Positions 37,076 through 48,205 of a DNA stretch of 64,000 nt are shown piece after piece. The DNA is from Fimbriosthenelais zetlandica (Eukaryota): assembly GCA_977030845.1 (NCBI GenBank), contig OZ365116.1, positions 2,294,001 to 2,358,000 on the forward strand, written 5' to 3'. The notes under the pieces are model-generated. The model was given only the letters and a program-made list of their open reading frames with translations. It searched no databases and was not told the origin of the DNA. Numbering within the stretch: position 1 is the stretch's first letter; every line of letters starts with the position of its first letter. The position numbers were made by a program, and so were the translations under genes.

Positions 37076-38850
37076 CTTACATAATGATTGTCTTATATTT
37101 TTATATTTACAGGTATTTTTCAGCATCACTGATTTGTATTGATTCTACTGTTTACTGTTATTATTTACATGCATGTTCATGAATGATTACCACCTTTGAT
37201 GTGTGATTTGTTTCTCCTCAATGAACCTCACGCTGTTTTGATGGTTTAATCCGTTTGGATTAGGCCTCATACATGTATGTTTATGTCAATGTTTTCTCAC
37301 GTCCACGGGAATAATGCCCGTGGATATGCCGCATATACTACCAATATTTAACATCTAGATCATAACAATGGTTCACCTATGACCTTATCATTTAGAATGC
37401 TTGTAGCGCCCCCACCCCGCCCACCTTGACACTAACCTTGACACTAACCTTGGCTCAGTCATTTTGTTATTAAATGAATCAGTTATTAAATAAATCACTA
37501 GGGGGCAGTAGCGTACCATTAATATCTATCCCTTGCCCTAATCTGCCCTATAGGTCAGTATTCCCCAGAAACGGCATGAAATCTGTGCATGGTCTATTCC
37601 ATATATAACAAACATAGGCTACGATATAATTATGTTTCATGACAATACTTTAGGCTATGATTATACAACAGGCCCCGTATAAATATGCTATATATTTGAC
37701 AGGATATTTTCTTAAGAAACGGTCCTTGAGGTATAATGTGATAATATATTCTTACGCTTGTCCCTTCTGTACGGCAGCACGGCTAGCTAGATCACGTGAT
37801 CCTTTCATCTTGTGGAGGATAATCCGTTCATCCAGCGTTAATCCTAATCCACACTTTAACACGTTAATCTCTATTGGTGGGTCTTATACTTTAACTAGCG
37901 ACAGAGCTGGTGATTCAAGTAGAGGGTGATAGGTGATGTCCACTACTTGGTCAGCACCTTCATTCATCTCCCCCTCTCAGACTCAGGTCTAGTGGTCAAG
38001 AAATGACCAGTGGTCACGTGATATTACAGGTGTAGACCAATAAGGGATGGTATATAACTATGTGTTGATTAATTTATTTCCCAGTATAATTTTCTTTCAC
38101 CCCCATTCACAATATTATCATAAACCCAGTCCGGTCATTCACTAAGCTAATATTTGTAGTAAATCGTTACTACATGGCTTATTAATAAATCCAACTGATT
38201 CTCTCAATCAAACAAATGTATAACCCTAGACCCTGCTTTGTTTTAAATTGCTTTTATTAAAACTCAGCGTTTCCAAATCTAATTTGAGATAATAATAAAT
38301 ACTAAGATAGATACATAATACCTCATAACTGCTTGTATTTTTGACAAGAGATATCCAAGATTTAAAAAAAGTAGAATAGACATAATCAGTATGAAGTACA
38401 AAGTTAGATACTAGAGCCAAATTAAAATACCATCGCTCAACCATACTTTAAAAAAACTAGCTTAATTAACACTCTGTGCAGAGTACATGTATGTCGATGA
38501 TAAATGCATTTAATCCATGTCAGATACAATGCTTTTACATGAGAGTACATGATGTAAACAAACATCTAGGTTCATCTCATCCTGTCAAGTACTATAGGCC
38601 TATATTATATCAACCAATCCTTATATTAGTAAAATGAAAACGTGCCAGTAGGTTCACAAAGCAAAGATGCACATGGCAATTAAAGTTAAAAAATAATAGA
38701 CACATTTATGAAGAATGTGTATCAGAAAATAATAGTTAACATTTTAAAAACTAGTTTTTCATGCATACTCATGTTTTGACAATTTTACATGAAGCTCCAC
38801 GAGTTTAGCTATATTTGGTGAGTATAAGGTGTATCAGAATATTATGATAT

Positions 38851-39735
38851 TTAGCTATATTTGGTGAGTATAATAGGACCAGTGGAGACTGTCTGACAGC
38901 TAACATCAGCAGTCCTCAACCCCCCACTCCCCGGACCATGTGTTGACTGACCACTACTCCGTAACAACTGATCAAAATCACTCCCCGCATCACAACCATC
39001 ACTATCTAGTCTAGCAAGCTTATAACTGTTCAGTCTTATGTCAGTTCGCGCATGAACATAACTATAAACGTTTGGGCCTTCCATGGGCCACACTACTAAG
39101 GCCCTCCATTTAGGCAAACGGAACCGCTCTATGAAAGAGAGATTATCATTATCAGAGGGAAAGCTGTGAGGTACAGCAATGTAAGTCACTTGACTTCTGA
39201 CTTTTAACTTGTAGTCAAGATGGCATGTGCGACCTGGTTCAACAGGTATATGTACAGCCTCATCTGAGAAATATACGCGTTCACCACTTCCTAAAATATG
39301 ACCAGAATACCTTTCATCTTGTAAAGTGTCAATCTTCGTCACCACACCAACTGACGGAGCAGACTTCAGGCACACAGTCTCTGAGCTCACAGTAAAGATG
39401 TTGTACTTGTTCAGTAACATTCTGAGGTCAGTCTCTGATCGGAGAAACTGGCGACTTTTCGGTTGCTGAAAATGTAATTGTTCTAGAATCATCCGTAGAG
39501 ATGTTTCCTCAATCTGATGTAGGGAGAACGCTACATGTGCCAGAGTAGCATGCTCATCTTCAGGCTCAAATGTAGCAGTATCCACTGAAGGACTTGATGT
39601 ATTGTCATTTTCTGAGATTTCTCTGTTTGGAGTATTGCTTGTATCCAAAGAATCCAGCTCTGTATTAGTGCAGGCTGTAGACAATGACATGAAGGAAGGA
39701 CATCTGTCCTTGTCAGGTTCTACCTGCCCGTCCAT
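38851..39735 (-). CDS. Tandem truncated paralog of the 1561-aa gene (one winged-helix + one OB-like domain + CQT tail), 294 aa; may be a pseudogene
   Basis: aa 46-294 align to aa ~1325-1561 of the large ORF (HATLAHVAFSL...TGPIILTKYS). aa 24-43 align to aa 800-819 (NTELD...EISEN). DNA similarity runs about 25 nt past the stop. Confidence 0.75.
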   Translation of the reverse strand: MDGQVEPDKDRCPSFMSLSTACTNTELDSLDTSNTPNREISENDNTSSPSVDTATFEPEDEHATLAHVAFSLHQIEETSLRMILEQLHFQQPKSRQFLRSETDLRMLLNKYNIFTVSSETVCLKSAPSVGVVTKIDTLQDERYSGHILGSGERVYFSDEAVHIPVEPGRTCHLDYKLKVRSQVTYIAVPHSFPSDNDNLSFIERFRLPKWRALVVWPMEGPNVYSYVHARTDIRLNSYKLARLDSDGCDAGSDFDQLLRSSGQSTHGPGSGGLRTADVSCQTVSTGPIILTKYS

Positions 39736-41449
39736 AACTGCCCCTGCCCCTAAAGGCTCTTATCCAAAATATCAAATGTTAGTTTACCTTCCAGAAAATA
39801 AATCCCCTGGTGTTGGAACAAGGCGAACACACAGGCACTCTGATAATGCAATTCCACAAGTTGCTTCTTATTCTCATAAACCACAATGTCTCAGGTCTCC
39901 AACACGGCTTGTATCTTCCCCTGACAGCTGATTCTGGTCCTCTTTGCTATCCTTTTGGGGGATTAACTGTGTACCTGGGTCTATATAGCAGTATGCGAGT
40001 TGTCTGAATGACATCAACAGAAACTGTGACAGTGTGGGAATCCCCACTCAGTTTCAGCTGCGGATTTTGAAATTTCTAGCCGTCTGTATCTTGACCATCT
40101 AGAATGTCGATCTCTCTCGTATATAACATAATATAGCCACCAAATTTTAACAGAGTTAAGTTCTCATACCAGGCTACAGATAAGGCCGCACCTAAAGCAA
40201 ACACAACACTTACATATCCTTATTATCTAATTGTTGTGATCTTTTTAAACGAGTGTCTGCTATACATGTATATAGAATTGCTGATTCACATATATAAAAC
40301 ATGTATCGTGAAACAAGACCTGGGAGACCTAGAAATGCAATGATCAAACAAGAGCTTAATCTCAACAACATTTATTTTCATGTGGGCAAAGTTCAGTTGT
40401 TTGTTTTGATTTAAGGTCCGAGTTAATAGGCCTGACTATGTTTATAATAGCGTGTGAAGCAGTGAGATGATCGCTGGATCTGGTATAACCTACTTGCATT
40501 GATTTTGATATGGAGGAGACGATACACCTTGATATCATATAGTCAACATACCAAAGGATCCGATATACTTGGTATTTTTTATACCGAGTTTTATACAAAA
40601 AATCATATAACAGAACATAGCAGGAATGTACGTGTGGGTTTTTTTTTGTATTTAGGATATTTATACAGCGAACAAAGGGGTCGTAGGCTCACGGGGCACA
40701 ATGAATGTGGCTATAGTCCATGGTATTCTGCCTATTGCTGTTTTCTAGGTGCAGACTAGAGAGGGAGGTGCTTTGAGTGGGTTAGGAGAAAGGTTGATGT
40801 TAGAATTAAAGCTTAAAGTTTTGAGTAGTGATGGATTATGGGTTAATGGTAATGGTTTGTGGGTGATTATGAGTGTATGTGAGATGGGGATGGGAATATG
40901 ATTGAGGGTTGAAGATGAATAGAGGGGTGCATAAACAGCACAGACATTGACCATGGATTGGTGAGGCTTGCCAACACTAGGGGGCCTCAGTGTCCTGTGG
41001 GGGTGCAGCTGCTGTAGACTACATCAGTCTTTATACATCTATTTAATATTAGAATATAAATAGTCATTATCACTATAAAATGTAGGCCTACATATAAATA
41101 TCACTATAGAATAAATAGCACTATAGAATATACATATAAATAGTAATTTTCAAGATAGATAAAATAGTTCAACAAGAGAGTTCGATCCCGATGTGGAAGT
41201 GTTCACAGAAAACTCATCTGGATAAGCACCTGACGTCAGCTGGTATAGGACTTCATCTTATCCTAGTTATATATCGACCAGTCTCTAGTTAAATGATGTC
41301 ACCTTACGTTATCTTAAGAAATAACGTTCAATCAATGCAGTGATGTGTGCAATCTCCGTGTCAGTATAGGTCCATATAGGCAAAATACAAATGACCATTA
41401 CACATAAAAGAACAATTTCTGAAGAAGGTGTATAAGAAAATAATGAATT

Positions 41450-44400
41450 TTAGCTATATTTGGTGAGTATAATAGGACCAGTGGAGACTGTCTGACAGCT
41501 AACATCAGCAGTCCTCGACCCCCCACTCCCCGGACCATGTGTTGACTGACCACTACTCCGTAACAACCGATCAAAATCACTCCCCCCATCACAACCACCA
41601 CCTACTGGTCTAGCAAGCTTTGAACTGTACAGTCTTAGACTTTTCCTAAAGACATGTGGACCTTCCATAGGCCACACAAGTAAGGCACATAAGTAAGGCA
41701 CATATCTCCAATTATCAACAAGAAACCAATGAGGTACGGCGATGTAACTCACTTGACTTTTGACTTTTAACTTGTAGTCAAGATGGCAGGTACGACCTGG
41801 TTCAACAGGTATATAGACAGACATATCAGTGAAATAGACCAACCCACCATGTCCTCTGATATATCCATGATACCTATCATCTGGTAGTGGGTTGATCCTT
41901 GTCACCTCCCCGACCAGCGGATCAGACTTCAGGCACACAGTCTCTGAGCTCACAGTAAAGATGTTGTACTTGTTCAGTAAGATTTTGAGCTCAGACTCAG
42001 TTCGGAGAAACTGGCGACTTTTCGGTTGCTGTACATGTAATTGTTCCAGAATCATCCGTAGAGATGTTTCCTCATTCTGATGTAGGGAGAACGCTACATG
42101 TGCCAGAGTAGCATGCTCATCTTCAGGCTCAAATGTACCAGTATCCACTGAAGGACTTGATGTAGTGACCTGAGATTGCTCAACTTGATGAACTTGATGA
42201 GGTCCTACTCCCTCCCGTTCAGTGCCTGTAGACATTTCCCCTGTAAGCACTGAAGGGCTTGATGTATTGATCTGAGGTTGCTGAACTTGATCAGGATCTA
42301 TTCCCTCCTGTTCAGTTTGCGTAGATAGTTCCCCTGTAAGCACTGAATTACGTGATGTAGATACCTGAGGTTGTTCTACTTGATGACTTTGATCAGGAAC
42401 TACTCCCTCCTGTTCAGTTTGCGTAGACATTTCCGCTGTAAGCTCTGAAGGGCTTGATGAAGTGACCTGAGATTGCTCAACTTGCTGAACTTGATGAGGT
42501 CCTACTCCCTCCCGTTCAGTTTGTGTAGACATTTCCCCTGTAAGCACTGAAGGGTTTGATGTATTGATCTGAGAGAGTTCTTGTAGCTTGGCTTGCTGAG
42601 CTAGATCAGGTCCTTCCTGTTCAGTTTGTGTAGACATTTCCTCTGTAAGCACTGAAGGATTTGATGTAGAGACCTGAGTTTTCTCTTGTAGCTTGGCTTG
42701 TTCAGCTTGATCAGGTCCCTCCTGTTCAGTTTGTGTAGACATTTCCCCTGTAAACACTGAAGGACTTGATGTAGTGACCTGAGTTTTCTCTTGTAGCTTG
42801 GCTTGCTGATCTTGATCAGGCTCAGTTTGTGTAGAACCTGTCCTTGTATCTCTCTGTGTATCATGAGTACACTGTAATGAGTAGGTGAGTAGCTGATGAT
42901 CGTACTCACTCATCCACGCTAACAGAGGGCGCCACTGGTCCTCCTCACTTCCTGTCACATGACGCTTCACCAACAAACACGTGACATGATCCCCCACATT
43001 GAGCACATTGATCATCTGACCCTTGGCTATATCCCTGCTGACCCTCACTCTGTCAGCTTTATCATAATAATACATCATCTTCCTACACAACATCAGACGT
43101 CCATAGCTGACACTGTCAATAGTGGCTGAATTCTTTGTCACAAACATGATCCGACCACTTGTACTCGTCCATTCAGAACAAATCGCTCTGTTCCCGGTCG
43201 TTTCCAGGCTATTGCCATCGTCAGTGAGTTGAAGCAGTAAGGGGTGTAAGCCTATATAGGCTTTACACATTGAAAGATTCGCTAAAGTCTGATTCAACAC
43301 TCGGGGAATGGCAGGGCTATTGGCCAGTGAATGTCTACTAACTGACAGCTGAGTGACAAGCTTTATCATTATCTTTGTGAGTAGGTAGAGGTCTGCTACT
43401 TCATTCAGAGTACATGTATTTGCCACTAGCGTTTCGGTTTTATATGATACAGGTTCTGTAGTGATCATATCATGTTCTAGAGCGCTATAAAAAGTGAGAG
43501 TGCTTGATGGACTGGATCCTCTGCTTGTTGAACCGCACATTTCATCTGAACATAATCCTTCTGATGCTATCATTGCTAGTTCCACCAAAGATGGTACTTT
43601 CTGATCAGTGTCAACTTCAATGTCATCATTGGTATCCAATCTCTGATCGCTGTGGGAAGTTGCCAAGCCAATAACGGCATTCTCTGATATTTCAGAGTTT
43701 GGAATACTGCTTACTTTAGGAGCATCCAACTCTGTATTTCCAGAAGGTGTTTTTTCATCCTTCACTGACCTTTCAATTAGAACTACCACAGCTCTACTCT
43801 TACTGGAGGTACAGTTGCCCACTTTTGGTAAACTGGAGATGGGCAAGTCGATATATTCAACTGAAGTGCCTACAGTCAGGACTGAAGGGTCCAGATCTTC
43901 CAACCCAAAGAAAACCTCAGTAGAAATATCTGACTTGATGAACCCATGATGTTTAAAAAGCATGGAGACAGTACCTCTCTTTTTTGTCGCAGCAAGGTAT
44001 ACTTTGTCATTTTGCACAGTAAATATATCCTTGTATAGTGTGACGAATGCTTGTACATCTGATGAAGACTCTATGAGGCCTCCTGAGATACTGGAGGGAC
44101 TCTCAATGAATCGCTGGTATATGTCCTTCACTGACATTGACTTGGTTTCCAGAAGGAGGAGTGAGAAGTACTTGAGAATGTTGACGTGAGCTAGTGTAAG
44201 GTCTGTCTCTAGTATGGTCTCCTTCCAGGGGTAGGTAGATATACGTATGTCTGGAGGACATATACCCTCCTCATATTTACCAGGAATTGAACCCTCCTCA
44301 TATTTACCAGGTTCCTGATGTACATTTGTATGTGTAAAAGTCCTTGATGACGAAGGTTTACAAACCAACAAACCTGTCTGCTTTTTTAGCTTGATTCCTA

Positions 44401-46135
44401 GAACTGTTTTCATCTGTGTTCTAGAAGTTGCTTTAATCTGCAGATTTTGTTGCGTGACCTTCTTGTCATAAATGATTTGGAATTTATCTCTTTTGTTTAA
44501 GAGGACCTTTATGATGCCTTCAGTACCAATGGCTTTAGCCAAGAGTTTCACCATTCCTGGTGAGTGCTGTATGTAACTGTGGATGTTTTGAACTTTAATA
44601 ATTGTTCTTTTGGCATCAAATTTCCCAGCGAAGAATTCACATGCCTCCTCTTTTGCCATAGCCACTGAACATACTAGGTTATCATCCAAACCAAATATTT
44701 CAGGATAGGCTTTTAAGAATTTAACTAAATTCCGTTTTCCAAGAAATTCTCTTATTGGTGTTGGTGCAGTGATTAATTTTCCTGTCAGGATTGGCAGGGA
44801 AATGATTTTGTCCGCTTCGATGTGTTTAATTAGAAACTCAATGGACAGATTCTCAATGGGAGGAGTGTCATTGCTAGTGACTTGATGCGTGGGATTGTTT
44901 TCCTTCTCCTCTACATCTCTCTCATGAATGTCACCAGGTTTGTCTGTGAGAGTTCTGTTACATGCCGCAGCTTCTGTTGTAACTGAGCTAATATCATCCT
45001 CAGTGTTGGCCGTTTCTGTCGTTTCCTGAAGACATTTTTTTTCTTCCTGTAGTTGTGAAGTAACCAAACCTTCTCTTGTAATTGCAAAGAGGCGAGGATG
45101 GTCACTAACAAACTGTACAGTACCCTTTGACTTGATGTATTTCTGAACGGGTGAAGGAGCATTGTTTAGCTCTTCATAAATCATATCAGTAGTTGTAGCG
45201 TCTTGGAGAATGTCCAGGACAAAGCAGACAGAATCTAGGATAACATTCCCACTGTTCCCAACCAAGCCTGAAGTTTGGTGAAGGCCATTACATAGAGTCA
45301 AAACTGATGAATACATCTCTTCAGAAACCAACCTGTATGGTTGTATCAAGCTGAAGAGTTCCTCCGTCAAAACATAGTCCGTCCCCTCTAATGTGGCTCT
45401 CACAAAGAGTTTAAATAGAAGGTCTCTTCTTATTGAGGTTAAAGACAACGAAATCTGGTCATCTGAATATTCATTAAAGAATTCTTGGATAATTATATTT
45501 ATTACGTCCCGAACGACTTGAGAGTCAGTCAGAGTAATCAAGGCTAGTTTATCAAGTACATACTCAGTGTGTAGGATAATTGTGTCAGTTTCTGACTCAA
45601 TTCCGTCATCTGCCATCGCTTCAAGAATGACTCTGTACATATGAAGGAGGATGGTACACGGTTGGTCAGCCAAGCCTGATGGTTGCGGTAACTTCTCCAC
45701 AAAGTGCCTCACCGTGAGATCCACTGCACCATTTGTATCAATGTAAAATATTTGTGGCCATTTTTTGAGGAATGTTGTAATCCTTCCAATGTTCTTGCTT
45801 GGTGGGCCCAGGACTTCATTGTCAGTTTCTGTGAGGTACTCTGTGAACTTGTCCACCTGGATAGTTCCATGTTTAGCGAGGACTCTGACAAAAACTCCAA
45901 TGGCGGAGTCATGAAATTCCTCATCTTGATTGACTAATGAGATCTGCCCAGCTCTAGTCACATGGAAGACACTGGGGTGTCTCTGTAGGAATCGTAGTAA
46001 CCCTGACTCATTCCTGCCCGCTTTACACCGTGATTCCTGGTCTAACTGAGACAAGTACCCAGCTAGATTCCTCACCAACACCGGCCCACGATCCACCAGC
46101 TTTTCCCGGAGGAAGGAAATGATTTTCTCCTCCAT
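41450..46135 (-). CDS. 1561-aa multidomain protein: Egalitarian-like winged-helix repeats + cold-shock/OB-like domains + TQT repeat region; single coding exon
   Basis: 4686-nt uninterrupted ORF; acceptor ctttttaatcttcAG 10 nt before the ATG. A repeated approx. 65-aa motif ends in FLxxHPxxFxV (aa ~1-68, 75-142, 298-360, 428-490, 495-560, 648-715, 912-978, 1340-1402). Beta-rich G-x-V/I...GF/YI...VFF/VYF segments occur at aa ~716-788, 988-1075 and 1405-1490. STQTE repeats span aa 1100-1305. Confidence 0.9.
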   Translation of the reverse strand: MEEKIISFLREKLVDRGPVLVRNLAGYLSQLDQESRCKAGRNESGLLRFLQRHPSVFHVTRAGQISLVNQDEEFHDSAIGVFVRVLAKHGTIQVDKFTEYLTETDNEVLGPPSKNIGRITTFLKKWPQIFYIDTNGAVDLTVRHFVEKLPQPSGLADQPCTILLHMYRVILEAMADDGIESETDTIILHTEYVLDKLALITLTDSQVVRDVINIIIQEFFNEYSDDQISLSLTSIRRDLLFKLFVRATLEGTDYVLTEELFSLIQPYRLVSEEMYSSVLTLCNGLHQTSGLVGNSGNVILDSVCFVLDILQDATTTDMIYEELNNAPSPVQKYIKSKGTVQFVSDHPRLFAITREGLVTSQLQEEKKCLQETTETANTEDDISSVTTEAAACNRTLTDKPGDIHERDVEEKENNPTHQVTSNDTPPIENLSIEFLIKHIEADKIISLPILTGKLITAPTPIREFLGKRNLVKFLKAYPEIFGLDDNLVCSVAMAKEEACEFFAGKFDAKRTIIKVQNIHSYIQHSPGMVKLLAKAIGTEGIIKVLLNKRDKFQIIYDKKVTQQNLQIKATSRTQMKTVLGIKLKKQTGLLVCKPSSSRTFTHTNVHQEPGKYEEGSIPGKYEEGICPPDIRISTYPWKETILETDLTLAHVNILKYFSLLLLETKSMSVKDIYQRFIESPSSISGGLIESSSDVQAFVTLYKDIFTVQNDKVYLAATKKRGTVSMLFKHHGFIKSDISTEVFFGLEDLDPSVLTVGTSVEYIDLPISSLPKVGNCTSSKSRAVVVLIERSVKDEKTPSGNTELDAPKVSSIPNSEISENAVIGLATSHSDQRLDTNDDIEVDTDQKVPSLVELAMIASEGLCSDEMCGSTSRGSSPSSTLTFYSALEHDMITTEPVSYKTETLVANTCTLNEVADLYLLTKIMIKLVTQLSVSRHSLANSPAIPRVLNQTLANLSMCKAYIGLHPLLLQLTDDGNSLETTGNRAICSEWTSTSGRIMFVTKNSATIDSVSYGRLMLCRKMMYYYDKADRVRVSRDIAKGQMINVLNVGDHVTCLLVKRHVTGSEEDQWRPLLAWMSEYDHQLLTYSLQCTHDTQRDTRTGSTQTEPDQDQQAKLQEKTQVTTSSPSVFTGEMSTQTEQEGPDQAEQAKLQEKTQVSTSNPSVLTEEMSTQTEQEGPDLAQQAKLQELSQINTSNPSVLTGEMSTQTEREGVGPHQVQQVEQSQVTSSSPSELTAEMSTQTEQEGVVPDQSHQVEQPQVSTSRNSVLTGELSTQTEQEGIDPDQVQQPQINTSSPSVLTGEMSTGTEREGVGPHQVHQVEQSQVTTSSPSVDTGTFEPEDEHATLAHVAFSLHQNEETSLRMILEQLHVQQPKSRQFLRTESELKILLNKYNIFTVSSETVCLKSDPLVGEVTRINPLPDDRYHGYIRGHGGLVYFTDMSVYIPVEPGRTCHLDYKLKVKSQVSYIAVPHWFLVDNWRYVPYLCALLVWPMEGPHVFRKSLRLYSSKLARPVGGGCDGGSDFDRLLRSSGQSTHGPGSGGSRTADVSCQTVSTGPIILTKYS

Positions 46136-48083: not shown

Positions 48084-48205
48084 GATGTTTTGAACTTTAA
48101 TAACTGTTCTTTTGGCATCAAATTTCCCAACGAAGAATTCACATACCTCCTCTTTTGCCATAGCCATTGAAAATACTATGTTACCATCCGAACCAAATAT
48201 TTCAG
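48084..48205 (-). pseudogene. 122-bp duplicated fragment of the winged-helix gene (copy of 44582-44703)
   Basis: Ungapped alignment with 8 mismatches in 122 nt, same orientation; translates EIFGSDGNIVFSMAMAKEEVCEFFVGKFDAKRTVIKVQNI. Confidence 0.9.

What the first reader, a model, noticed from the sequence alone, without database searches (positions are those of the whole stretch)
42131..42844. Multivalent LC8 (dynein light chain) TQT array inside the winged-helix protein
Seen: a disordered approx. 33-35-aa tandem repeat carrying STQT six times (aa 1101, 1133, 1168, 1203, 1237, 1271), one decayed STGT (1302), interleaved TQV/SQV/SQI variants, and a C-terminal DVSCQT (aa 1544-1549, nt about 41489-41506). 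Established: TQT in disordered regions is the LC8/DYNLL anchor, and multivalent arrays (ASCIZ-type) form LC8 ladders that dimerise clients; Egl itself requires LC8 binding. Inference: repeat expansion tunes LC8 stoichiometry, supporting a dynein-linked or dimerised RNP role.
Basis: partly seen in the sequence, partly recalled or inferred. Interest (0 to 1): 0.75.

Follow-up and report, generated by a model that had tools for sequence, protein, structure and literature searches.

The report
Tandem STQTE repeat, candidate LC8 array
A young in-frame tandem repeat in a disordered linker of a large, fast-evolving Egalitarian-type RNA-binding protein carries six copies of a peptide that fits the docking motif of the dynein light chain LC8, so it may bind several LC8 dimers, but this is predicted and not shown.

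Summary
The minus-strand ORF 41450-46135 (1561 aa, four WH_Egal domains) holds seven in-frame units of 31-35 aa at aa 1098-1335. STQT occurs six times and STGT once, and DVSCQT sits at aa 1544-1549.

The LC8 reading is partly supported.
- For: five units read [GEA]E[ML]STQTE, which meets every published flank preference for LC8. The stretch is predicted disordered. This core is the only part of the unit with few amino-acid changes relative to silent ones (about 0.24, against about 1.4 elsewhere). The genome's LC8 is 84/89 identical to DYNLL2. A complex test gave weak support: 0.60 against a best control of 0.02.
- Against: no ortholog is available. The nearest paralog's single unit lacks TQT. 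Other family members carry unrelated tandem repeats in their linkers. E at -4 is commoner in tested non-binders. The interleaved TQV/SQV/PQV sites are poor LC8 candidates.

New here: the C-terminal CQT motif is the truly conserved one. All four paralogs in this genome have it, and so do all 120 listed 'egalitarian protein homolog' orthologs, of which 119 have no TQT. The array is therefore a lineage-specific addition to a family with one probable ancestral LC8 site.

It would be a new member of a known kind. Interest is moderate.

The parts
41450..46135 (-). Single open reading frame of 1561 aa. It has four WH_Egal winged-helix domains, OB/cold-shock-like domains, the repeat array and a C-terminal CQT motif.
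   Evidence: WH_Egal at aa 4-69, ~432-491 and ~653-715, plus a fourth stretch; fold of aa 990-1561
42824..42847 (-). Unit 0 motif RTGSTQTE (aa 1097-1104), directly after the upstream OB-like domain. It differs at one position (-4) from the validated binder RDGSTQTE of AMOTL2.
42728..42823 (-). Unit 1 (aa 1105-1136), ending in GEMSTQT(E). It holds the sub-motif KTQVTT.
   Evidence: used in the complex test (aa 1112-1146)
42623..42727 (-). Unit 2 (aa 1137-1171), with core EEMSTQTE.
42518..42622 (-). Unit 3 (aa 1172-1206), with core GEMSTQTE.
42416..42517 (-). Unit 4 (aa 1207-1240), with core AEMSTQTE. The nearest validated binder is AEFSTQTP of Bassoon.
42314..42415 (-). Unit 5 (aa 1241-1274), with core GELSTQTE. 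Its sub-motif has proline at -1 (PQV).
42221..42313 (-). Unit 6 (aa 1275-1305), with a decayed core GEMSTGTE (codon CAA replaced by GGC). Its sub-motif is PQI.
42134..42220 (-). Partial last unit (aa 1306-1334). It is close to unit 4 and ends in DTGT, with no TQT. The homology with the downstream mini-paralog starts inside it, at about nt 42181.
41654..42136 (-). Confidently folded winged-helix domain (aa ~1334-1400) plus OB/cold-shock-like barrel (aa ~1405-1494), downstream of the array.
   Evidence: pLDDT 80-93; CspD, RecO and uS12 OB-fold matches
41453..41506 (-). C-terminal motif DVSCQTVSTGPIILTKYS (aa 1544-1561). This is the family-wide conserved CQT/SQT motif and the probable ancestral Egl-type LC8 site.
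38851..39735 (-). Tandem mini-paralog of 294 aa. It is 82% identical in DNA to 41425-42181, keeps the WH-OB module and the CQT tail, and has no array.

Best explanation
A 93-105-nt unit in the disordered linker between an OB-like domain and the last winged-helix/OB module of a large, intronless, fast-evolving WH_Egal protein has been duplicated in tandem, in frame. The result is six copies of an LC8-compatible 8-mer ([GEA]E[ML]STQTE, plus RTGSTQTE) spaced 32-35 residues apart.

The most likely working model has three steps. LC8 (DYNLL) dimers dock on these strands. Each dimer holds two chains in parallel. Several dimers therefore zip two copies of the protein together along about 200 residues. 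This would add avidity to the single C-terminal CQT site that the whole Egalitarian-like family shares, and so stabilise the dimer that Egl-type adaptors need to bind RNA.

Shown here: the repeat, its reading frame, the predicted disorder, the fit to the motif rules, the constraint on the core, the presence of a canonical LC8 in the genome, and the conservation of the C-terminal motif.

Inferred: that LC8 binds at all, that a ladder forms, and that this serves dimerisation or dynein-linked RNA transport.
For: 1. Motif fit. With Q as position 0, the cores have T at -1 and +1, E at +2 (preferred: P/D/E), S at -2, M or L at -3 (a large side chain is preferred) and E at -4 (a polar residue is required) (rules: PMC6607443; 8-mers). 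My hand counts in that paper's Table S4 give E at +2 in 17/79 binders against 3/32 non-binders, and M at -3 in 3/79 against 0/32. Near-identical validated binders exist: AEFSTQTP, LDMETQTE and RDGSTQTE.
2. Disorder. pLDDT is 28-37 across the array.
3. Constraint. Between units, the -4..+2 core has pN 0.080 and pS 0.277 (ratio about 0.24). The rest of the unit has pN 0.202 and pS 0.148 (ratio about 1.4). The five 7-codon windows with the lowest pN all overlap STQTE-QEG. The core is therefore not kept merely because the repeat is young.
4. The partner exists. There are four full LC8 genes, one of them 84/89 identical to DYNLL2.
5. Complex test with two LC8 chains and aa 1112-1146: weak support, score 0.60 (runs 0.55-0.67) against a best control of 0.02. 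The runs agree in at least 90% of contacts, and the partner's pLDDT is at least 47.
6. Family context. Every relative keeps a C-terminal [CS]QT motif. Egl has a single C-terminal Dlc motif that is needed for its dimerisation.
7. Spacing. The 32-35 residues between sites lie within the 20-36 seen in the C-terminal ATMIN cluster (Q positions in Table S4).
8. A distant relative, P0002, has KDSSTQTF in the same linker. This is one residue away from the AMOTL1 binder KDSSTQTD.
Against: - No binding data exist, and no RNA or DNA runs were listed.
- No ortholog was found among 1.8 billion cluster representatives; the best hit is 29% identical. Conservation of TQT across species is therefore untested.
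- The nearest paralog (contig C13, 52-60% identical) has one unit, reading TGILETSEG where this gene has TGEMSTQTEQEG. It has no Q-T.
- Other family members carry unrelated tandem repeats with no TQT: P0001 (KQQTAG units) at the same OB-WH linker, and P0007 (about 12 units of another sequence) after its WH-OB module. Repeat growth in disordered linkers seems generic in this family.
- 119 of 120 canonical EGAL1-like orthologs have no TQT.
- E at -4 occurs in 4/79 binders but 4/32 non-binders, and the cores carry several acidic residues, which the rules call unfavourable.
- Many TQT peptides do not bind LC8 (PMC6607443 abstract).
- The complex score is in the weak band, and it may reflect the model's memory of the many solved LC8-TQT structures.
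- The constraint signal is marginal on event counts: Fisher p 0.05-0.12.
Confidence: 0.45

Rival explanations
1. The array is a generic low-complexity spacer. It would be a tandem expansion in a permissive disordered linker, tolerated or selected only for length, flexibility or charge, and its TQT would be incidental and not used by LC8.
For: Relatives carry quite different tandem repeats in their linkers: P0001 has five units with KQQTAG at the same OB-WH linker, and P0007 has about 12 units of another sequence after its WH-OB module. The family evolves very fast: it is 29% identical in a species whose canonical EGAL1 gene is 79% identical. Most of the unit evolves at a ratio of about 1.4. 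The C13 paralog's unit has no TQT. Many TQT peptides do not bind LC8.
Against: The STQTE-QEG core is the one block with few amino-acid changes despite the highest silent divergence. All flank positions fit the LC8 rules at once. The complex test passed far above its controls.
Confidence: 0.35
2. The array is an SQ/TQ cluster or other phospho-regulated region. The dense S/T-Q sites, and T-E-x-E next to the anchor, would serve as substrates for ATM/ATR-type or acidophilic kinases, alone or as a switch that blocks LC8.
For: There are 11 S/T-Q dipeptides in 238 residues, out of 19 in the whole protein. TQT motifs are also potential ATM-family kinase sites (PMC5619840). The conserved block extends beyond the LC8 8-mer into EQEG.
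Against: Nothing links this cytoplasmic-type RNA-binding architecture to DNA-damage signalling. The second S/T-Q per unit is not conserved (T, S or P precede the Q).
Confidence: 0.12
3. The array is not part of a functional protein. The gene would be a decaying duplicate, or the array would be removed by splicing, so the peptide would never be made.
For: No RNA run was listed. The neighbourhood holds a truncated mini-paralog and a pseudogene fragment with a stop. The protein is absent from the public protein collections.
Against: The frame stays open for 4.7 kb in DNA of about 41% G+C. All unit length differences are in frame. The core shows purifying selection. The folded domains are predicted with high confidence.
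Confidence: 0.06

Closest known systems
ASCIZ/ATMIN LC8-binding domain (7 sites in Drosophila, 11 in human)
   Same: Both have several TQT-anchored 8-mers in one disordered region. Site spacing is similar: 20-36 residues in the C-terminal ATMIN cluster and 32-35 here. Both regions are acidic and Q/T/S-rich and also qualify as SQ/TQ clusters. LC8 dimers bind two chains in parallel as beads on a string (PMC5963919; Table S4).
   Different: ASCIZ is a zinc-finger transcription factor, and its sites differ from each other in sequence. Here the host is a WH_Egal/OB RNA-binding-type protein, and the sites are near-identical copies made by a recent tandem duplication. Binding is measured for ASCIZ and only predicted here.
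Drosophila Egalitarian (Egl) and its Dlc/LC8 site
   Same: Both have WH_Egal domains. Egl has a single Dlc-interaction motif at the C-terminal end, and Dlc's main role there is to dimerise Egl so that it binds RNA and BicD. The C-terminal [CS]QTxS spacing here matches the four-residue spacing of the egl2pt mutations S965K and S969R. That match is my inference, because I could not retrieve the fly sequence.
   Different: No exonuclease-like domain was detected here by Pfam. The protein is much larger, with repeated WH-OB modules. Egl has one site and no TQT array. This gene is not the Egl ortholog of its genome; that gene lies on contig C19.
Lophotrochozoan 'egalitarian protein homolog' / EGAL1-like proteins (contig C19 gene, 640 aa)
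   Same: Both combine WH_Egal domains with a cold-shock-like domain and the C-terminal CQT[IV]xT...ATQL[YF] motif. That motif is present in all 120 listed orthologs.
   Different: The canonical proteins are about 600 aa and well conserved (43-94% identity), and 119 of 120 have no TQT. The gene studied here belongs to a divergent, rapidly evolving offshoot and has gained the array.
Other multivalent LC8 clients (Chlamydomonas RSP3, Bassoon, KANK1 linker)
   Same: They have three or more LC8 sites about 20-30 residues apart in a disordered segment. LC8 stacking is proposed to stiffen or dimerise the segment (Table S4; abstracts).
   Different: The host proteins are unrelated, and their sites were not produced by a recent perfect tandem repeat.

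Membership tests
LC8/DYNLL-binding linear motif | TQT (or a close variant) anchor with Q at position 0 | tested here: met
   Six TQT anchors at aa 1102-1272; the seventh unit has TGT.
LC8/DYNLL-binding linear motif | The motif lies in an intrinsically disordered region | tested here: met
   The AlphaFold2 model gives pLDDT 28-37 and no secondary structure over aa ~1089-1332. This is a prediction only.
LC8/DYNLL-binding linear motif | Flank preferences: +2 P/D/E, -2 not a bulky aromatic, -3 a large side chain, -4 polar and not hydrophobic | tested here: met
   Five cores read xE[ML]STQTE and meet all four preferences. Unit 0 (RTGSTQTE) has a small residue at -3. Caveat: E at -4 occurs in 4/79 binders against 4/32 non-binders (my hand count).
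LC8/DYNLL-binding linear motif | Direct binding to the LC8 dimer groove | tested here: inconclusive
   The complex prediction gave weak support: 0.60 against a best control of 0.02. In the tool's calibration the pass mark was reached by 51 of 78 solved complexes and 2 of 108 mismatched pairs. A score of 0.60 or under was seen in only 5 of those 78 solved complexes and in all 4 mismatches that passed (of 180). No experiment was possible.
LC8/DYNLL-binding linear motif | Conservation of the anchor in orthologs | tested here: inconclusive
   No ortholog was found. Within the array the core is constrained. The nearest paralog's unit lacks TQT.
Multivalent LC8 array (ASCIZ type) | Three or more LC8 motifs in one disordered segment, separated by short linkers | tested here: met
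   Six candidate motifs spaced 32, 35, 35, 34 and 34 residues apart.
Multivalent LC8 array (ASCIZ type) | Formation of stacked LC8 dimers bridging two client chains | not testable with these tools
   This needs ITC stoichiometry, SEC-MALS or negative-stain EM.
Egalitarian / EGAL-1 family | WH_Egal winged-helix domains | tested here: met
   PF23713 matches at E 9.8e-35 with four stretches.
Egalitarian / EGAL-1 family | 3'-5' exonuclease-like domain (a feature of fly Egl, from my own knowledge) | tested here: not met
   No Pfam exonuclease match in the whole protein or in nine pieces of it.
Egalitarian / EGAL-1 family | Single C-terminal Dlc/LC8-interaction motif | tested here: met
   ADVSCQTV followed by STGPIILTKYS lies at the C-terminus. 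The same motif is found in all paralogs and in 120 of 120 EGAL1-like orthologs. Its identity with the fly Dlc site is inferred and was not aligned.
SQ/TQ cluster domain | At least three S/T-Q sites within 100 residues (the Traven and Heierhorst definition, from my own knowledge; the paper is cited) | tested here: met
   11 S/T-Q sites in 238 residues. Kinase targeting was not testable.

The most novel reading that the evidence does not exclude
A rapidly evolving, intronless family of giant WH_Egal/OB proteins uses tandem duplication of a short linear motif to change its LC8 valency on a short evolutionary time scale. This gene went from one C-terminal CQT site to about seven sites. The C13 paralog duplicated the CQT tail instead. 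The array would then be a natural, recent example of how a multivalent LC8 ladder is born, one that zips an RNA adaptor into a rigid parallel dimer.
Probability: 0.3. Interest if true: 0.6.

Novelty: new member of a known kind. Interest (0 to 1): 0.4.

Why it matters
If LC8 does bind, this would be a multivalent LC8 client whose sites are visibly young copies of one unit. It would show repeat expansion as the route by which LC8 ladders arise. It would also give a matched set for testing how LC8 valency affects dimerisation and RNA binding of Egalitarian-type adaptors: the array gene, a paralog with one TQT-less unit, and a mini-paralog with none.

Independent of the array, the invariant C-terminal CQT motif across lophotrochozoan 'egalitarian homologs' is a concrete, testable candidate for the conserved LC8 site of this family.

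If LC8 does not bind, the array is an ordinary low-complexity expansion.

Tried and rejected
- A word-indexed homolog search with the whole protein found nothing.
- An exhaustive search with aa 362-1561 found four distant relatives only, so ortholog conservation could not be tested.
- A tail-restricted search with P0002, meant to reach named Egl proteins and align the fly Dlc site, returned only the query itself.
- Full-text and supplement searches did not yield the fly Egl motif sequence.
- Two searches for sequencing runs listed none, and four other attempts failed because the machine was busy. Expression and copy-number variation are therefore untested, and read laying was not used.
- Pfam found nothing in the array.
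- The ESM Atlas had no usable hit for the array.
- The repeat is not a dispersed satellite, because it occurs only at this locus.
- The interleaved [TSP]Q[VI] sub-motifs are rejected as LC8 sites. Position -1 is T, S or P across units. V at +1 occurs in validated binders only with V or I at -1. The single TQV peptide in Table S4 is a non-binder.
- 'Conserved only because the repeat is young' is rejected for the core, because its silent divergence is the highest in the unit.
I took only hand counts from Table S4, so as not to type more than 100 peptides into a script.
- The Swiss-Prot fold search gave only generic OB-fold matches.
Full report
WHAT IS THERE

Window 41450-46135 on the minus strand is one open reading frame of 1561 aa. 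Pfam finds only the Egalitarian winged-helix domain (PF23713, E 9.8e-35, four stretches). Scanning the protein in pieces places three of them at aa 4-69, about 432-491 and about 653-715.

An AlphaFold2 model of aa 990-1561, built on an eight-row family alignment, shows three zones:
- a weakly predicted beta-rich domain up to about aa 1088;
- about 240 residues with pLDDT 28-37 and no secondary structure;
- a confident winged helix plus beta-barrel at aa ~1334-1489 (pLDDT 80-93).

The barrel matches OB/cold-shock folds such as CspD, RecO and uS12. The finding's coordinates (42131-42844, aa 1098-1335) coincide with the unstructured stretch.

THE OBSERVATION

- STQT at aa 1101, 1133, 1168, 1203, 1237 and 1271;
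- STGT at aa 1302;
- TQV, SQV and SQI between them;
- DVSCQT at aa 1544-1549.

Tandem Repeats Finder reports periods of 102 and 105 nt with 79-89% matches. The units are 31-35 aa and all length differences are in frame. The repeat DNA occurs nowhere else in the 447-Mb genome, so it is a local expansion and not a satellite. About 0.73 TQT would be expected by composition, but the six copies are one event multiplied.

DOES IT LOOK LIKE AN LC8 SITE?

The published rules (PMC6607443) ask for four things: a T-Q-T anchor, P/D/E at +2, no bulky aromatic at -2, a large side chain at -3 and a polar residue at -4.

Five units read GEMSTQTE, EEMSTQTE, GEMSTQTE, AEMSTQTE and GELSTQTE, and they meet all of these. 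Unit 0, RTGSTQTE, has a small residue at -3 but differs from the validated AMOTL2 binder RDGSTQTE only at -4.

My hand counts in that paper's Table S4 (79 binders, 32 TQT-type non-binders):

| Residue and position | Binders | Non-binders |
|---|---|---|
| E at +2 | 17/79 | 3/32 |
| M at -3 | 3/79 | 0/32 |
| S at -2 | 20/79 | 10/32 |
| E at -4 | 4/79 | 4/32 |

E at -4 is the weakest feature. All four binders with E at -4 have a large residue at -3, as the cores here do.

The second sub-motif of each unit ([TSP]Q[VI]) is not a credible LC8 site. Two units have proline at -1, and the only TQV peptide in the table is a non-binder.

IS THE CORE KEPT BY SELECTION OR BY YOUTH?

I made a codon alignment of the six full units and computed Nei-Gojobori proportions.

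| Part of the unit | pN | pS | Ratio |
|---|---|---|---|
| -4..+2 core | 0.080 | 0.277 | about 0.24 |
| Rest of the unit | 0.202 | 0.148 | about 1.4 |

Among all 37 circular 7-codon windows, the five with the lowest pN all overlap STQTE-QEG. The core has therefore accumulated silent changes but few amino-acid changes, which argues against mere recency or gene conversion.

The sample is small. On counts of events, Fisher p is 0.05-0.12. The conserved block also runs past the LC8 8-mer into EQEG, so the constraint need not be for LC8.

THE PARTNER AND THE COMPLEX TEST

The genome has four full-length LC8 genes. One 89-aa product is 84/89 identical to DYNLL2.

I used the one-client set-up, which PMC12057147 found to give fewer false positives.

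The verdict was weak support:
- Score 0.60 (runs 0.60, 0.67 and 0.55) against a best control of 0.02 among three controls.
- The runs agree in at least 90% of contacts.
- The partner's pLDDT is at least 47.

By the tool's own calibration, the pass mark was reached by 51 of 78 solved complexes and 2 of 108 mismatched pairs. A score of 0.60 or under was seen in only 5 of those 78 solved complexes and in all 4 mismatches that passed (of 180). Many LC8-TQT complexes are solved, so the pass may be from the model's memory. It shows likeness, not binding.

FAMILY CONTEXT

This is where the evidence moved beyond the finding.

The protein has no close relative in public collections. A word-indexed search found nothing. 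An exhaustive search of 1.8 billion cluster representatives found four hits, the best 29% identical.

Within its own genome there are several relatives:
- a tandem mini-paralog at window 38851-39735 (72% protein identity to aa 1301-1561, no array);
- a paralog on contig C13 (52-60% identical);
- a paralog on contig C10 (23-33% identical);
- a pseudogene fragment at window 48084-48205.

The C13 copy has one unit only, reading TGILETSEG where this gene has TGEMSTQTEQEG. The Q-T positions are therefore not shared with the nearest relative.

Distant relatives carry other tandem repeats. P0001 has five units containing KQQTAG at the same OB-WH linker. P0007 has about twelve units of an unrelated sequence after its WH-OB module. 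P0002, however, has KDSSTQTF in the same OB-WH linker, one residue from the AMOTL1 binder KDSSTQTD.

A search of the genome with PF23713 also found the canonical gene on contig C19. It encodes 640 aa with three WH_Egal domains and a cold-shock-like segment. Its orthologs are named 'egalitarian protein homolog', 'EGAL1-like' or 'Egal-1 winged helix domain-containing'. They come from annelids, nemerteans, molluscs and Lingula. The closest named ones are annelids, so the genome is probably an annelid's.

All 120 listed orthologs end in CQT[IV]xT[GSN][DE][IV][IL]ATQL[YF], 16-20 residues from the C-terminus in nearly all of them. Q and T are invariant and C is present in 119. 119 of the 120 have no TQT anywhere.

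The same motif ends this gene (ADVSCQTV-STGPIILTKYS), the mini-paralog, C10, P0001 and P0002. It occurs twice in tandem in C13. It has a polar residue at -4 and V or I at -3, like an LC8 8-mer. It is atypical in having C at -1 and a hydrophobic residue at +2.

[quoted passage not shown] The four-residue spacing of those serines fits [SC]-Q-T-x-S. I could not retrieve the fly sequence, so this equation is an inference.

The big-protein family also evolves very fast. P0001 comes from the same assembly as an EGAL1 ortholog that is 79% identical. P0002 comes from the same runs as one that is 94% identical.

INTERPRETATION

The array is a lineage-specific, in-frame expansion inside a family that very probably already uses LC8 through one C-terminal site.

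The best-supported mechanism, at about 0.45, is this. The STQTE cores bind LC8 dimers. Each dimer holds two chains in parallel, as in ASCIZ (PMC5963919). The array then adds avidity and stiffens the linker between RNA-binding modules.

The main rival, at about 0.35, is that this is one more neutral linker repeat of a repeat-prone family and the TQT is incidental. A phospho-regulatory SQ/TQ cluster, with 11 S/T-Q sites in 238 residues, and a non-expressed gene are minor rivals.

These are the tuning of stoichiometry by copy number and a dynein-linked RNP role.

VERDICT

- Observation: confirmed.
- Interpretation: partly supported.
- Novelty: if true, a new member of the known class of multivalent LC8 clients, notable for its visibly recent origin.
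- Interest: moderate (0.4).

Noticed in passing
window 41453-41506; also L021:6100-6202, L008, L011: The C-terminal motif [CS]QT[IV]xTG..II...Y is shared by every WH_Egal/OB protein examined. It is present in 120 of 120 lophotrochozoan 'egalitarian homolog' orthologs, with Q and T invariant. It is probably the family's real LC8 site, but it extends about 12 conserved residues beyond an LC8 8-mer, which LC8 binding alone does not explain.
   Followed up: partly
L008 (G000:C13:28965705-28969487), last 60 residues of the 722-aa frame: The C13 paralog carries the C-terminal CQT motif twice in tandem (the stretch SRGLSRPTVDVGCQT[VI]STGGII is duplicated). This is a second, independent way of raising the number of candidate LC8 sites. 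The frame lacks large parts of the main gene and may be a decayed copy.
   Followed up: no
window 48084-48205: A 122-nt fragment is 93% identical to 44582-44703 of the main gene (aa 478-521) and has an in-frame TAG. It is a pseudogene remnant upstream of the gene.
   Followed up: partly
window 38826-39735: The tandem mini-paralog (294-aa ORF) is 82% identical in DNA to 41425-42181. Homology starts inside the last partial repeat unit, so one duplication breakpoint lies in the array.
   Followed up: partly
L021:4280-6202 (G000:C19:38248279-38250201): The canonical EGAL1-like gene of this genome is a single 640-aa open frame with three strong WH_Egal domains. Its closest named orthologs are annelid (Paralvinella at 59%, then Ridgeia and Owenia), which suggests the genome is an annelid's.
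   Followed up: partly
G000:C11:14648563-14651346, C11:47064207-47064458, C38:5391531-5391782 (L001-L004): There are four full-length LC8 (Dynein_light) coding sequences, each in one uninterrupted frame. Two lie 2.5 kb apart in tandem, and a fifth match is partial. LC8 is therefore multi-copy here.
   Followed up: no
P0001 (L017), P0007: Relatives from other species carry their own long tandem peptide repeats. P0001 has four units containing SPEKLKSPT and five containing KQQTAG, and P0007 has about twelve units of some 25 aa. Repeat growth in linkers is a family trait.
   Followed up: no
window 42134-42517: Unit 4 and the partial last unit are nearly identical at their starts (EREGVGPHQV.QVEQSQVT), 99 residues apart. 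Tandem Repeats Finder also reports a 210-nt period. The array therefore grew at least partly by multi-unit duplications.
   Followed up: no
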